Assembly (NCBI GenBank): GCA_020536535.1
Contig: JAHLWZ010000451.1
Span: forward strand, 1 to 58,486
Reading direction: 5' to 3'
From: Pelomyxa schiedti
Taxonomy: Eukaryota; Protista; Evosea
DNA: 58,486 nt
Below, one piece after another: positions 49,872-53,825 of the stretch (position 1 is its first letter; each line of letters starts with the position of its first letter). Both the position numbers and the translations under genes were made by a program. The notes below the pieces were generated by a model, which was given only the letters and a program-made list of their open reading frames with translations, was not told the DNA's origin and made no database searches.

Positions 49872-51250
49872 ATGCCCAAGACACTGCTTATTATCGACTT
49901 TAGCACCAACTGGTACGCCGTGTTCAACAACAAAGCCAAGCCAAGGAACAGGCTGGCCAACGGTGATCAAATAATTATCGAGCAAACCGAATGGAAGTAT
50001 ATGTCTATCAAGGCCTGGTTAGTCTTTCTGCCCTGTTTTTCTTTAAGATAGTTTGAAAAGTACTTCGTACTATACGCGATATACGTTTTATACTTTGGTA
50101 ACAAATTTGCTGCAGTTCTGATGGTCGGTGCTGGGTGCATATTAACCGAAGTGAGGACCCCTTCCCGTGCAGCTCTCAGAGCAATGACAGGGTTATTTCA
50201 CCTGACTTCTTGTTGATCCGAAACTTCCCTACGACAGTGCACGACGAGGACTTCAAGAACATCCTTATGGGATTCATGTTTGCTAACATTCCATCAGTGA
50301 ACAACCTTCAGTCCGTTTACCTTGGTATCTGCTTCTGTTTCTTGATTTCTTTTTTGTTTAAAATATGCCCAAATAGATATGCAGAGACCTCTGATTTATA
50401 ACGAGCTTCGCAAGTGCGAAGTAGCGCTGAAGGAAAGGGCAAGAGCAGCAGGTCGTGACACAACCAACATGCTTTCTGTTGTGCCAATGCAATACTTTGG
50501 CAACCAGGTGCCGATCACGGTCTTAATTCAATTTTCGCTAACACAACACAGGGAGGAGTCCTTGGGCCACAAGAAATCCAAAATGTCCCAATAAACTTCC
50601 CCACTGTGATGAAGGTTGGCAACTGCCACGCTGGTATTCACAAATATCCTCTCTTTTTTTCTTTAACTCTGAAAAGGTTATGGTAAAGCTCTCGTTGCCA
50701 AGGCCACTGACCTCGCTGATATATCAAGCATTGTGGCTCTCAATAGGAACTTCTACACGTGTGTAAAACAAAAGCAAAAACATCAACAATAGTAGAATCT
50801 GAACTAACTTTTTTTTTGGTTTTTTGGCTTTACAGAGTAGAAGAGTACCTTGACTTCGAGTGGGAGTACCGTATCCAGTGCGTAGGCGAAAACGTGCGCT
50901 GCTTCAAGCGTGAGTCCAAGAACCACTGGAAGAGCAACTGGGGAAATCTGGTGTTTGAGGACTACCCTGTCGCTGAGCATCACGTTGAGTTTGCTCGCGA
51001 GTGTGCCAAGGTAATCCTCCCATACATTCCTTTCACCAACGTAATTGAATGTTTTTGCTAATGCGTGACTTTGTAGATCTGGGGAGGGCTTGATATTTTT
51101 GCCATTGATGTGGTGCACATGGCCGATGGTCGTGAATTCGTTCTGGAGATCAACAACTCCTCCAACGGGTTCTACTTCAAGCACGAGGTCGAGGACGCCG
51201 GCATTGTAGCAGATCTGGTCCTGGCCAAGATGAACGCCCTTTGGCACTAG
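49872..51250 (+). CDS. Synapsin-like ATP-grasp protein (C domain only)
   Basis: LLIID..NWYAVF, IEQTEW, PDFLLIRN, ANIPSVNNLQSVY, FPTVMKVGNCHAG|YGK, YRIQCVG..FKRES..WKSNWG and WGGLDIFAID..VLEINNSS. Confidence 0.87.
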
Positions 51251-51392: not shown

Positions 51393-53646
51393 ATGTCGGG
51401 TACCAATTACGTGTCGGCCGCCTACGCCGCTGCTATTATCGGGTCTGAGCCGCCAGATACGCCACCCACAGCGCCGCCTGCTGCCCACACGTCGCGGGAA
51501 CCGGAGCAAGGAGGGGGGAGTTACTCTTCGCCCGAGGGGCTCCACCCGTTCTCCTCTTACGTTTCGCTGAGCACAGGGGCCGCGATGATACTGGGCTCGG
51601 AGCCGCCCCTTACAACGCCCCCCTACGTCACCCCGGCGGAGATCGTTGGCTCCTTTCCCCCCGAGAGCTCCCCAGTGCGGCCGCCATCCGCACCGCCGTT
51701 GTCGCCGTCGCAGCCTTCGCGTCCAACTGTCCATTCCTCTCCACCGTCACAGTCCCAGTCACAGTCACCTTCACCATCACGATCGCAAGCACAACCACCA
51801 ACATCAACCCCGCCTTCCAGTTTGTCTGTGCCTCGTGTGGACATCGCGGATTACTATAGAAGTCGGCACTTCTCGGTGTACTGTTTGAAGTGCAAAGAAG
51901 TCAAAGAAGCCAAAGTTCGTCCATGTTGTAAGGAACATAGGCACGACAACGTTCAATATATGTCGGCACCAGAAAACTGGGCAGATTTGATGGGACGTTC
52001 AGATGCCACGTGCACATGTTTCACTTGTCTTACCACTGGTGTCACCACCAAAGTAGCTTTTCTCTTCGGGTGTCGTGTCTGCAACAGCAATGAGGTTGTT
52101 TTTTCGCAGTCACTATTTATTGACTGGACGGGCACTACGCACAAGTGTGAGGCCTGCCGCAATGTAATTTGCTCCCATTTTTTTTATCATCTTGAGTAAC
52201 AAAAGAGCAGGACTTCCGCCAAGACGCCATGGTGTGGTTTCCCTGTGGACACTGCTTATGCACAGGGTGCTTTATTAGTTATACAACACTGATATGTACA
52301 AGCCCACAACCCATCCATTGGAATCAAACAGACAAACAACATGCCATAAAGTGTTGTTGTATGCAACTGGGAACTGTCGCTACTATACTTAATTGCCAAT
52401 AGACTCAGATTGTCCTACTTCCTTCTTACCTGATGACCGTATACTTAAAATACTCGGCCCCGAATTGTATAACCGCTATAAAGCAAAGTGCGCTAATATG
52501 TTCTCTTTAATGGTATGTCTTTTGTAACACTTAATTGAGCTCAATGGTTTTACAGGACCGGGGGGATACAAGTGTATACTGTTCCAATCCACAGTGTATG
52601 TGCTCTGGTTCACCGTTTATTATCGTTCATCGAGGTAACTCCGGCTCTAGCCACTATGGTGAATGTCCCATGTGTAAGGTAGCTTTGGATATGCACTCAT
52701 TGACAATTTAAATAAATGCCCAGACGATCACATGTCTTGTATGTAAAGACAATAAGGAGAGCTGTTCTTGCCCCCCACTACTTGCCCCGCCTGTACCTAC
52801 TACTTCGCTCTCTACAACAGGTATTTGGTGAAAAATTTCTTGTCTTAAAGATTGTAGGTCACTTTTGCCGCGGGATTATTCTGCCTCCTGAAAAAGAAAG
52901 AAATCTCATTCTTTCGATCAAAGGGAATACCACCCTCATAATACAGGTACATGGATGCCCTATAAGTGGTGAAACTGAATTTCTCTAAATAGATCCACAG
53001 AGATTTTACAATAAAAATGGTGAAGAAAGTTATTGAAGAAACATCCGGAGATCGAGATCTCTACCCTTGCTTCCGACAAAAATTACTTGCTGGAGGGAAA
53101 CAACTTGAGGATACAGAGACCATTGGCCGTTACAATTTAGAGAACGAGTCAACAGTTTTTTTGATTATGTCTACCCTTTCACCTGAAACAGGGTCTCCCT
53201 CTTCCAGGTGCACATTTTCTCTGGCTCCTATCTTATTTTGCAAACAACTATTTCAGGAACTCGTCCGCAAGTGAATCCGTTAGGAGCTCTGTGCGCAGCT
53301 TTGTAGGCACTGTCTGTCAGACTTGCCCAAAATGCGGAGCTGGGATTACCAAGCCAAGGTATTCTTTGCTTTTGAGATTATCGAATTTTTGAAATATTGG
53401 AATACAGAAGCCATGGCTGTCACACTGTAAAATGCCCACAATGTGGCCAAGCATTTTGGTAAACCATAACTTGTTACGCCATTGAAAAACTGATTCAATC
53501 TCCACAACAGCTACAATTGTCGTGCTATCGGCAAATGTGAATGTCTTCCGTATTGCACTGACAAATGTATCTGCCTTCCCTGCACCGAGTGCCGACGTAA
53601 TAAGCGTTGCCCTGGATGTGGTGGCTGCGATGTTTGCAAGCTATAG
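51393..53646 (+). CDS. Parkin-like RBR E3 ligase: Pro/Ser-rich N-terminus, RING0, RING1, IBR, ubiquitin-like domain, RING2, Cys-rich tail
   Basis: RING0: FSVYCLKCKEVKEAKVRPCC..PENWADL..C..C..AFLFGC. RING1: CEAC..FPCGHCLCTGCFISY..CP...LKILGPELYNRY. IBR: YCSNPQC..CPMC..CLVC. Ubl: QKLLAGGKQLEDTETIGRYNLENESTVFLI. RING2: CPKCGAGITKPRSHGCHTVKCPQCGQAFCYNC. Confidence 0.85.
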
Positions 53647-53825
53647 CTGGACTCCCCGGTCAAAGAAATGAAATGGGTGAACAAAATAATCAGCAGACTC
53701 TATTCATTTTCCTTCTCATCACAGAGGACTGTTTAACAAATAACAAAGACGAAACCGAAAAATTTACACTTGTTTTGTTTTTTTCTATAAGTGAGTTTGG
53801 TGTCACTCCAGGGAATGGGGCCACC

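What the first reader, a model, noticed from the sequence alone, without database searches (positions are those of the whole stretch)
51393..53646. Parkin-type ligase with the ubiquitin-like domain moved between IBR and RING2
Seen: nine exons splice in frame to RING0, RING1, IBR, Ubl (about 52899-53169), RING2 and an extra Cys-rich tail. The Ubl keeps the Ser65-equivalent (NESTVF, TCA at 53149-53151), and RING2 keeps a candidate catalytic Cys (HGCHT). Established: RING0 is the Parkin-specific domain. Animal Parkin has an N-terminal Ubl and a REP element in the IBR-RING2 linker, and is activated by PINK1 phosphorylation of Ser65 in mitophagy. Inference: a permuted Parkin with the Ubl at the REP position implies a different autoinhibition mechanism. 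The organism is probably an anaerobe with reduced mitochondria, so the role may be PINK1-independent or involve symbiont/xenophagy control.
Basis: partly seen in the sequence, partly recalled or inferred. Interest (0 to 1): 0.82.

Follow-up and report, generated by a model that had tools for sequence, protein, structure and literature searches.

The report
Amoeba Parkin-like ligase, internal Ubl
The anaerobic amoeba Pelomyxa schiedti expresses a ubiquitin ligase built on the core otherwise seen only in animal Parkin (the Parkinson's-disease ligase), but its ubiquitin-like domain sits between the IBR and the catalytic RING2 domain instead of at the front, so Parkin-type ligases exist outside animals in a rearranged form.

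Summary
One spliced RNA contig carries all nine joints. It is NCBI 'hypothetical protein Pelo_5644' of Pelomyxa schiedti.

Domain order: Pro/Ser-rich N-terminus, RING0, RING1, IBR, ubiquitin-like domain, RING2, Cys-rich tail. RING0-RING1-IBR matches only Parkin among solved structures by sequence (E 7e-8). By fold, the top 32 matches are all Parkin. A profile of the amoeba RING0 domains, run against 1.84 billion proteins, retrieved Pelomyxa proteins, Parkin-type proteins (named ones all animal) and one repeat artefact.

At least six paralogs exist here; five show the internal Ubl, and only Pelomyxa proteins had it. The scan already noted this design on two paralogs elsewhere in this genome (s1-386752, s1-383163).

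Caveats:
- This copy is the most diverged paralog.
- It keeps the catalytic Cys (Cys556) and the Ser65 equivalent (Ser499), but the catalytic His is Thr.
- It keeps only part of Parkin's phosphate pockets.
- Its Ubl resembles ubiquitin more than Parkin's Ubl, so 'moved' is not shown.
- No PINK1 orthologue was established.

Verdict: new variant of a known kind, undescribed in the literature searched. The mechanism is inferred.

The parts
51393..53646 (+). Whole coding region, 10 exons: 51393-52163, 52211-52358, 52403-52512, 52556-52678, 52724-52820, 52858-52946, 52993-53207, 53257-53358, 53408-53458, 53511-53646. 613 aa plus stop. Equals Pelo_5644 (P0001).
   Evidence: Exon arithmetic. All nine joints in RNA contigs. 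Colinear with P0001. Name.
51393..51842 (+). Pro/Ser-rich low-complexity N-terminus (residues 1-150), with no Ubl. Not covered by RNA before 51709.
   Evidence: Composition: P 33, S 32 of 150. No Pfam hit beyond a chance-level one, Hamartin E 2.8. RNA coverage.
51867..52163 (+). RING0, the Parkin-specific zinc domain (residues ~159-257). All eight zinc-ligand positions are filled (Cys164, Cys167, Cys179, His182 in place of Cys169, Cys207, Cys212, Cys227, Cys230 in place of His215). The Lys161/Arg163 equivalents are Lys174/Arg176. The Lys211 equivalent is Gly226.
   Evidence: PF17976 E 9e-4 and 22.8 bits in the genome scan. Parkin is the only solved-structure family matched. Foldseek. Residue map.
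52146..52512 (+). RING1 with the Parkin-type helix ILGpElYNRY (residues 252-343; holds introns 1 and 2). His302/Arg305 equivalents are Arg319/Lys322.
   Evidence: Alignment to human Parkin RING1. PF17978 is weak on exon 3 (E 0.061) but above the cut-off in paralogs P0002 and P0005.
52556..52771 (+). IBR (residues 344-400; holds intron 4). Eight Cys; Pfam does not detect it.
   Evidence: Aligned to the Parkin IBR by phmmer. Model pLDDT 60-81. No Pfam IBR hit at this position.
52902..53178 (+). Ubiquitin-like domain (residues ~432-508; holds intron 6) in the IBR-RING2 tether. Ile44, Lys48 and Ser65 equivalents are Leu478, Lys482 and Ser499. There is no C-terminal Gly-Gly.
   Evidence: PF00240 E 1.8e-8. 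Ubiquitin E about 2e-8 with alignment. Positions.
53149..53151 (+). TCA codon of Ser499, aligned with Ser65 of ubiquitin.
53315..53520 (+). RING2 / catalytic domain (residues 538-572; holds introns 8 and 9).
   Evidence: PF22191 IBR_1 E 1.7e-4, below the cut-off. C-x2-C...GC...C motif. Model pLDDT about 78-80 in parts.
53418..53420 (+). TGT codon of Cys556, the Parkin Cys431 equivalent. The next residues are His557 and Thr558, so the His433 position is Thr.
   Evidence: The other readable Pelomyxa RING2 domains read C-H-H.
53530..53643 (+). Cys-rich tail (residues 576-613, 11 Cys) in place of Parkin's C-terminal WFD motif. It is shared with paralogs and with a RING0-less RBR at C973.
   Evidence: No Pfam match.

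Best explanation
This is a real, expressed gene of the anaerobic amoeba Pelomyxa schiedti. It encodes one member, the most diverged one compared, of a lineage-specific family of at least six Parkin-type RBR ubiquitin ligases.

Shown: the protein has Parkin's RING0-RING1-IBR core, a ubiquitin-derived domain inside the IBR-to-RING2 tether, a RING2 with the catalytic cysteine, and an extra Cys-rich tail.

Inferred from how RBR ligases and Parkin work: RING1 binds an E2 charged with ubiquitin, ubiquitin passes to Cys556 of RING2 as a thioester, and it then goes to a substrate lysine. RING0 probably shields RING2 in the resting state. The tethered Ubl probably docks in cis on the RING1/RING0 surface and gates release of RING2. 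Ser499 is a possible phosphorylation switch, and the kept basic residues (Lys174, Arg176, Arg319, Lys322) are possible phosphate acceptors.

Because the catalytic His position is Thr, this copy may discharge ubiquitin slowly or act mainly as a regulator.
For: - Gene and transcript.
- Organism: the assembly has 52,367,397 bases in 5337 contigs, matching the published P. schiedti assembly. The protein is named Pelo_5644.
- Parkin-type core by sequence: RING0-IBR hits only Parkin among solved structures that are RBR ligases (five entries, E 7e-8 to 8e-6). The only other matches at E up to 1 are two chains of a plant receptor kinase at chance level.
- Parkin-type core by fold: the 32 best Foldseek matches are all Parkin (E 9e-13 to 4e-9), and HOIL-1, ARIH2, RNF216 and HOIP follow at E 7e-5 or worse. 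The ESM Atlas gives Parkin clusters first by features and by shape.
- Distribution: the RING0 profile against 1.84 billion representatives found 49 proteins. Three are P. schiedti, one is a repeat artefact, and the rest are Parkin-type proteins with a RING0. Every named one is from an animal, and wherever a Ubl was detectable it lies N-terminal.
- Paralogs: P0002 and P0005 pass Pfam's cut-off for Parkin RING1, and P0002 also for RING0. Five paralogs (four seen here as loci, plus P0005 as a protein) share the internal Ubl. Where the genomic loci were read, the intron inside the Ubl sits at the same point, so the design predates their duplication.
- Ubl.
- Residue map.
- Tree: the three Pelomyxa proteins form one side of a branch (100/98) and are not nested in an animal subgroup.
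Against: - For this copy, the Pfam RING0, RING1 and RING2 matches are all below the curated cut-offs.
- It has the longest branch in the tree, 3.38 changes per column.
- His433 is Thr, Glu444 is Ala and Lys211 is Gly.
- Parkin's C-terminal WFD motif, which packs on RING0, is replaced by a Cys-rich tail, so the RING0-RING2 clamp may differ.
- The model is poor for the Ubl, most of the tether and the tail (pLDDT 27-50; pTM 0.43). The tools give no coordinates, so no docking could be read.
- No activity, phosphorylation or substrate data exist.
- The tree has no outgroup, so 'sister to animal Parkin' is not shown.
Confidence: 0.72

Rival explanations
1. Built-in allosteric activator. The tethered Ubl does not inhibit. 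Instead it occupies in cis the RING1-IBR ubiquitin-binding site, which is the site where phospho-ubiquitin activates Parkin and where free ubiquitin activates other RBR ligases. The ligase would then be constitutively primed, with no kinase needed.
For: - The Ubl is more ubiquitin-like than Parkin-Ubl-like.
- It keeps the hydrophobic-patch equivalents Leu478 and Lys482.
- The basic residues at the phospho-ubiquitin pocket are kept as Arg319 and Lys322.
- No PINK1 orthologue was established.
- Allosteric ubiquitin sites on RBR ligases are established knowledge of the family.
Against: - Ser499 and the flanking E-S-T are kept exactly as in ubiquitin, which fits a phosphorylation site.
- Two of the three RING0 phosphate-pocket residues are kept.
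- There is no structural evidence either way.
Confidence: 0.25
2. Decaying or non-catalytic paralog. This copy is a diverged duplicate that no longer works as a ligase. It would be a pseudo-enzyme or scaffold, while other paralogs carry the activity.
For: - Longest branch in the tree.
- Pfam scores below the cut-offs, while paralogs pass.
- Thr at the catalytic His position, where four other paralogs and a RING0-less RBR have His.
- Lys211 equivalent lost.
- Another paralog (C291, P0002) has no RING2 at all.
Against: - The reading frame is intact over ten exons.
- All zinc-ligand positions of RING0 and RING1, the IBR's eight Cys, and the RING2 ligands checked are filled, apart from conservative Cys/His swaps.
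- The gene is expressed and spliced correctly in four RNA runs of one sample.
- Variants seen in the RNA are in-frame insertions of 3 and 6 nt.
- Cys556 is kept. In Parkin, loss of His433 slows catalysis but does not abolish thioester formation (established knowledge).
Confidence: 0.2
3. A generic RBR ligase whose N-terminal zinc domain resembles RING0 only by Cys-rich composition, or a gene-model artefact that fuses two genes.
For: The Pfam RING0 score is below the cut-off in this copy.
Against: - No other RBR ligase reaches E 1 against RING0-IBR.
- The RING0 profile retrieves Parkin-type proteins from 1.84 billion sequences, apart from one repeat artefact.
- Foldseek favours Parkin by seven orders of magnitude.
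- One RNA contig spans all joints.
- Five paralogs share the domain order.
Confidence: 0.04
4. Recent transfer from an animal, or animal contamination of the assembly.
For: Apart from Pelomyxa, every named protein with a RING0 that was retrieved is from an animal.
Against: - The nine introns of 37-52 nt match this genome's intron-rich style.
- There are six paralogs on separate contigs.
- The gene lies on a 58-kb contig among other amoeba genes.
- The Pelomyxa group is not nested in any animal subgroup.
- Identity to animal Parkins is only 21-27%.
Confidence: 0.03

Closest known systems
Parkin (PRKN), animal RBR E3 ligase
   Same: - RING0 followed by RING1 with the ILG-E-YNRY helix, then IBR, then RING2 with the catalytic Cys.
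- A ubiquitin-like domain with a Ser at position 65.
- Lys161 and Arg163 equivalents kept, and basic residues at the His302 and Arg305 positions.
   Different: - The Ubl lies between IBR and RING2, where Parkin has the REP element, not at the N-terminus.
- The N-terminus is a Pro/Ser-rich stretch.
- His433 is Thr, Glu444 is Ala and Lys211 is Gly.
- Parkin's C-terminal WFD motif is replaced by a 38-residue tail with 11 Cys.
- There are at least six paralogs instead of one gene.
- The host lacks classical mitochondria.
HOIL-1L / RBCK1
   Same: An RBR ligase that also carries a ubiquitin-like domain. It is the next-best structural match after Parkin and appears among the Atlas feature hits.
   Different: Its Ubl is N-terminal and it has an NZF finger and no RING0. 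Foldseek E is 7e-5, against 9e-13 for Parkin.
Ariadne-type RBR ligases (ARIH1/HHARI, ARIH2)
   Same: RBR catalytic cycle. Autoinhibition by an accessory domain that masks the RING2 cysteine (established knowledge).
   Different: The masking domain is a C-terminal helical Ariadne domain. There is no RING0 and no Ubl. They are weak structural matches (E 4e-4 or worse).
Paralogs in the same genome (Pelo_3794, Pelo_2487, and loci at C804:81402, C804:133055 and C579)
   Same: Same domain order where it can be read. The intron inside the Ubl sits at the same point in the loci read. The Cys-rich tail is shared.
   Different: - The paralogs keep C-H-H at the catalytic site.
- They have Thr or Ala at the Ser65 position.
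- Two pass Pfam's Parkin-domain cut-offs.
- Pelo_3794 lacks RING2.
- Pelo_2487 has extra Cys-rich repeats between RING0 and RING1.

Membership tests
RBR (RING-between-RING) E3 ligases | RING1, IBR and RING2 in this order, with zinc ligands in place | tested here: met
   Aligned to Parkin RING1 and IBR with the ligands kept. RING2 matches Pfam IBR_1 at E 1.7e-4, below the cut-off. Foldseek aligns about 430 columns to Parkin R0RBR chains.
RBR (RING-between-RING) E3 ligases | Catalytic cysteine in RING2 (G-C-x-H motif) | tested here: met
   Cys556 is in H-G-C-H-T. The His two residues after it is Thr in this copy.
RBR (RING-between-RING) E3 ligases | E2-dependent thioester and ubiquitin-transfer activity | not testable with these tools
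   Needs a biochemical assay.
Parkin family | RING0 domain directly before RING1 | tested here: met
   Parkin is the only RBR family matched by sequence among solved structures (E 7e-8). The top 32 fold matches are Parkin. The RING0 profile retrieves Parkin-type proteins. Pfam PF17976 is below the cut-off here (19.9-22.8 bits against 25) and above it in paralog P0002 (30.4 bits).
Parkin family | Parkin-type RING1 (Pfam PF17978) | tested here: inconclusive
   Only E 0.061 on exon 3 alone, and not listed for the whole protein at E 0.01. Paralogs pass with 34 and 35.8 bits against a cut-off of 26.6. The helix motif ILGpElYNRY aligns with human ILGEEQYNRY.
Parkin family | N-terminal ubiquitin-like domain | tested here: not met
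   The N-terminus is low-complexity with no Ubl. The only Ubl is at residues 432-508, after the IBR.
Parkin family | REP element (Trp403) in the IBR-RING2 linker, blocking the E2 site | tested here: inconclusive
   The linker holds the Ubl. No aligned REP was found, and the model there has pLDDT below 50.
Parkin family | Catalytic triad Cys431-His433-Glu444 | tested here: not met
   Cys556 is kept; His433 is Thr558 and Glu444 is Ala567.
Parkin family | Phospho-ubiquitin pocket (Lys151, His302, Arg305) and phospho-Ubl pocket (Lys161, Arg163, Lys211) | tested here: inconclusive
   Lys161 and Arg163 are kept. Lys211 is Gly, His302 is Arg, Arg305 is Lys and Lys151 is Leu with a Lys next to it. The charge is partly kept; function is unknown.
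Parkin family | Activation by PINK1 phosphorylation of Ser65 in ubiquitin and the Ubl | tested here: inconclusive
   The Ser65 equivalent is present. A kinase family with an HCD catalytic loop exists, with 28 pattern hits against 3 in the control. The member tested hits PINK1 at E 1e-9 over the longest stretch, but PDK1 scores better (4e-11). Atlas features give generic kinase clusters.

The most novel reading that the evidence does not exclude
A phospho-ubiquitin switch of the PINK1/Parkin kind predates animals. In Pelomyxa it has been rewired: the Ubl is tethered next to RING2, there are many ligase paralogs, and there is a large family of PINK1-related kinases. It would then survey hydrogenosome-like organelles or the amoeba's prokaryotic endosymbionts rather than respiring mitochondria.
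Probability: 0.15. Interest if true: 0.9.

Novelty: new variant of a known kind. Interest (0 to 1): 0.65.

Why it matters
Parkin and PINK1 are listed among metazoan-specific genes (PMC3789837). They are reported absent from Entamoeba histolytica, the best-studied relative of this amoeba (PMC9796589). The paper that describes the P. schiedti genome mentions neither parkin, PINK1, mitophagy nor ubiquitin.

A family of Parkin-type ligases in an amoebozoan therefore changes the picture of where the RING0-RBR design arose. It also offers a natural rearrangement of Parkin's regulatory parts. Because the Ubl sits at the place of the REP element, biochemists could test which features of Parkin autoinhibition and phospho-activation depend on domain order.

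The host has only hydrogenosome-like organelles and lives with endosymbionts. The family could therefore show what such a ligase does when there are no respiring mitochondria to police.

Tried and rejected
- **Joined model.** I searched the spliced model exon by exon by reference and never built or sent a joined model. Full-length work used the public protein P0001, which one search returned.
- **Word-based protein search.** Searching with P0001 residues 150-613, and with an alignment of three paralogs, found only Pelomyxa proteins. It missed even P0005, so this blank is weak.
- **Metagenome scan.** A scan of JGI metagenome contigs with the RING0 profile gave 111 pattern matches, none confirmed.
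- **RING2 and tail against solved structures.** Only chance zinc-ribbon matches appeared, so RING2 rests on Pfam IBR_1 and the motif.
- **AlphaFold2 model.** Built from 21 sequences, it is good for RING0-RING1 (pLDDT 72-92) but poor for the Ubl and tail. The tools return no coordinates, so the Ubl could not be placed.
- **PINK1.** Loci around Sel1 repeats held no kinase. A pattern for the HCD catalytic loop found the candidate kinase family, but it was not clearly PINK1-like in my tests.
- **Literature.** No paper holds parkin, RING0 and Amoebozoa together. Other searches gave no description of this architecture.
- **Rejected readings.** Gene fusion artefact, animal contamination, and chance resemblance of the RING0 domain (see rival explanations).
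Full report
**Gene model and transcript**

The region 51393-53646 on the + strand reads as ten exons joined by nine GT-AG introns of 37-52 nt. The exons sum to 1842 nt, which is 613 codons plus TAG.

Four single-cell RNA runs of one sample hold the locus. All nine joints are seen, and one 1477-nt contig (X1 record 2) runs from 51851 to 53739 across every one of them. The Ubl exons are therefore on the same transcript as RING0, RING1, IBR and RING2. Coverage begins at 51709, so the Pro/Ser-rich first ~105 codons and the start codon rest on the open frame only. The upstream gene (see 'Surroundings') ends at 51250 and its RNA reaches about 51318, so there is no room for further 5' exons. The RNA also shows in-frame insertions (CCC after 52784, CTGTCT after 53637) and one C>T change.

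**Organism and public record**

The assembly has 52,367,397 bases in 5337 contigs. This matches the published Pelomyxa schiedti assembly of 52.4 Mb in 5337 scaffolds with 7.4 introns per gene (PMC8887013).

The profile search returned a 613-aa protein, P0001. It is colinear with my exon pieces, with one-residue gaps at the five split codons. NCBI names it 'hypothetical protein Pelo_5644 [Pelomyxa schiedti]'. From here on I used P0001 by its id.

**Domains**

- **RING0.** Exon 1 alone matches Pfam PF17976 (Parkin RING0) at E 9e-4, 19.9 bits, below the 25-bit cut-off. Its best solved-structure match is louse Parkin at E 9e-6.
- **RING0-RING1-IBR.** Residues 150-430 match five Parkin entries (E 7e-8 to 8e-6). 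No other RBR ligase reaches E 1; the only other matches are two chains of a plant receptor kinase at chance level.
- **Ubl.** Pfam ubiquitin matches residues 440-506 at E 1.8e-8, above the cut-off.
- **RING2.** Pfam IBR_1 matches residues 538-573 at E 1.7e-4, below the cut-off.
- **Structure model.** An AlphaFold2 model of residues 150-613, from 21 aligned sequences, is confident for RING0-RING1 (pLDDT 72-92) and moderate for the IBR. It is poor for the Ubl, most of the tether and the tail.
- **Fold search.** The 32 best Foldseek matches are all Parkin (E 9e-13 to 4e-9; TM 0.60 on R0RB chains). HOIL-1, ARIH2, RNF216, HOIP and HHARI follow at E 7e-5 or worse.
- **ESM Atlas.** Parkin clusters come first both by sequence features (0.92) and by shape.

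**Family and distribution**

Pfam RING0 finds three loci in the genome. Searches with the tail and RING1 exons add more. Reading the loci gives at least six paralogs:

| Paralog | Source | Note |
|---|---|---|
| This gene (C451, Pelo_5644) | window | most diverged copy |
| C291 (Pelo_3794, P0002) | L002 | no RING2 found |
| C804:81402 | L003 | full domain order |
| C804:133055, minus strand | L004 | 5' end cut by the contig end |
| C579 | L005 | full domain order |
| Pelo_2487 (P0005, 740 aa) | protein record only | extra Cys-rich repeats between RING0 and RING1 |

Each of the five other paralogs has the ubiquitin-like domain after the IBR. In the four read as genomic loci, an intron sits at the same point inside the Ubl. 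Those with a RING2 also share the Cys-rich tail. The design therefore predates the duplications and is not a recent ubiquitin insertion. A RING0-less RBR at C973 shares the RING2 and tail type.

A profile of three RING0 domains, run against 1.84 billion representative proteins, gave 49 hits at E 1e-3 or better. Three are P. schiedti and one is a repeat artefact. The rest are Parkin-type proteins with a RING0; every named one is from an animal, and some are unnamed. Wherever a Ubl was detectable in these, it lies before RING0. Only the Pelomyxa proteins have it after RING0.

The word-based searches and a metagenome scan added nothing, and both are weak tests. In an unrooted tree, the three Pelomyxa proteins form one side of a branch (100/98). 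P0001 has the longest branch, at 3.38 changes per column.

**Residues (human Parkin numbering first)**

- *Zinc ligands.* All are in place in RING0 and RING1, with two conservative swaps: Cys169 becomes His182 and His215 becomes Cys230.
- *Phospho-Ubl pocket.* Lys161 and Arg163 are kept as Lys174 and Arg176. Lys211 is Gly226.
- *Phospho-ubiquitin pocket.* His302 is Arg319, Arg305 is Lys322, and Lys151 is Leu with a Lys next to it.
- *Ubl.* It aligns with ubiquitin (ynlenESTvflim against ynIqkESTlhlvl). Ser499 (TCA 53149-53151) is the Ser65 equivalent. Leu478 and Lys482 match Ile44 and Lys48. There is no Gly-Gly end.
- *Catalytic site.* Cys431 is Cys556. His433 is Thr558, with His at the neighbouring position, and Glu444 is Ala567. 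The four other Parkin-like paralogs with a readable RING2, and the RING0-less RBR at C973, read C-H-H.
- *C-terminus.* Parkin's WFD end, which packs on RING0, is replaced by a 38-residue tail with 11 Cys.

**'Moved' or gained?**

The internal Ubl matches single ubiquitin at E about 2e-8 and its paralog's Ubl at 29% identity, E 6e-12. Against a Parkin Ubl it shows only 24% identity at E 4.3. A permutation of Parkin's own Ubl is therefore not shown. Independent capture of a ubiquitin-derived domain is equally possible.

**PINK1**

Earlier notes of this scan report a large PINK1-like kinase family with an HCD catalytic loop. A back-translated HCD-loop pattern gives 28 hits against 3 in the control. 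One member, in L019, has an intact kinase domain. Its best solved-structure matches are PDK1 (4e-11), MNK and greatwall. PINK1 follows at 1e-9, though over the longest aligned stretch. Atlas features give generic kinase clusters. I count PINK1-likeness as not established here, and I found no PINK1 orthologue.

**Mechanism**

What is shown is the anatomy; the rest is inference from RBR and Parkin biochemistry. The most likely reading is a Cys556-dependent RBR ligase whose tethered Ubl gates RING2, possibly through Ser499 phosphorylation and the kept basic residues. The rivals are a built-in allosteric activator, and a diverged copy with little or no catalytic activity.

**Literature**

Parkin and PINK1 are listed as metazoan-specific (PMC3789837) and as absent from Entamoeba histolytica (PMC9796589). 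The genome paper does not mention them. No paper found describes this architecture.

The scan itself noted the same design earlier on two paralogs elsewhere in this genome (s1-386752, s1-383163). My reading of the paralog loci agrees with those notes.

**Surroundings**

The upstream gene is a synapsin-type ATP-grasp gene ending at 51250. An unrelated gene lies downstream on the minus strand. Nothing nearby is functionally linked to the ligase.

**Verdict**

This is a new variant of a known kind. Interest 0.65.

Noticed in passing
window 50759-51250 (+): The upstream neighbour ends in a synapsin-type ATP-binding domain (Pfam Synapsin_C, E 2.2e-10 on the last exon). It has at least one short intron.
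   Followed up: partly
window 52771, 52784, 53637: RNA contigs of the same sample show a C>T change and two in-frame insertions (CCC adds a Pro in the post-IBR linker; CTGTCT adds two residues near the C-terminus). These are probably alleles or cell-to-cell variation.
   Followed up: no
L002 (G000:C291:67500-73500), protein P0002: Paralog Pelo_3794 has RING0, RING1, IBR and the Ubl, but no RING2 could be found downstream. It would be a Parkin-like protein without a catalytic domain. Its Ser65 position is Ala.
   Followed up: partly
L006 (G000:C973:4500-9500) and L014 (G000:C423:35012-38140): Another Pelomyxa RBR ligase (L006), without RING0 or an internal Ubl, shares the C-H-H catalytic motif and the same Cys-rich tail. 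The tail is therefore a module of Pelomyxa RBR ligases in general. L014 matched the same RING2 but was not read.
   Followed up: partly
L019-L022 (G000:C197:102116-123859), L017: Tandem genes encode a coiled-coil region followed by a kinase with an HCDIK catalytic loop. The genome has 28 pattern hits against 3 in the control. PINK1 is among the nearest solved structures but is not the best.
   Followed up: partly
protein P0005 (Pelo_2487, on a 4.7-kb contig): This paralog carries about 200 extra residues of repeated Cys-rich motifs between RING0 and RING1, and has His and Arg at the His302/Arg305 positions.
   Followed up: no
proteins P0003 and P0004 (hits): P0003 is a 942-aa perfect tandem repeat that hits the profile 16 times and is probably an artefact. 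P0004 is a Parkin with a duplicated Ubl-RING0 stretch, probably an assembly artefact.
   Followed up: no
G000, genome-wide: Sel1 repeats are extremely abundant: about 2000 first-look candidates, many in open frames of 400-900 aa.
   Followed up: no
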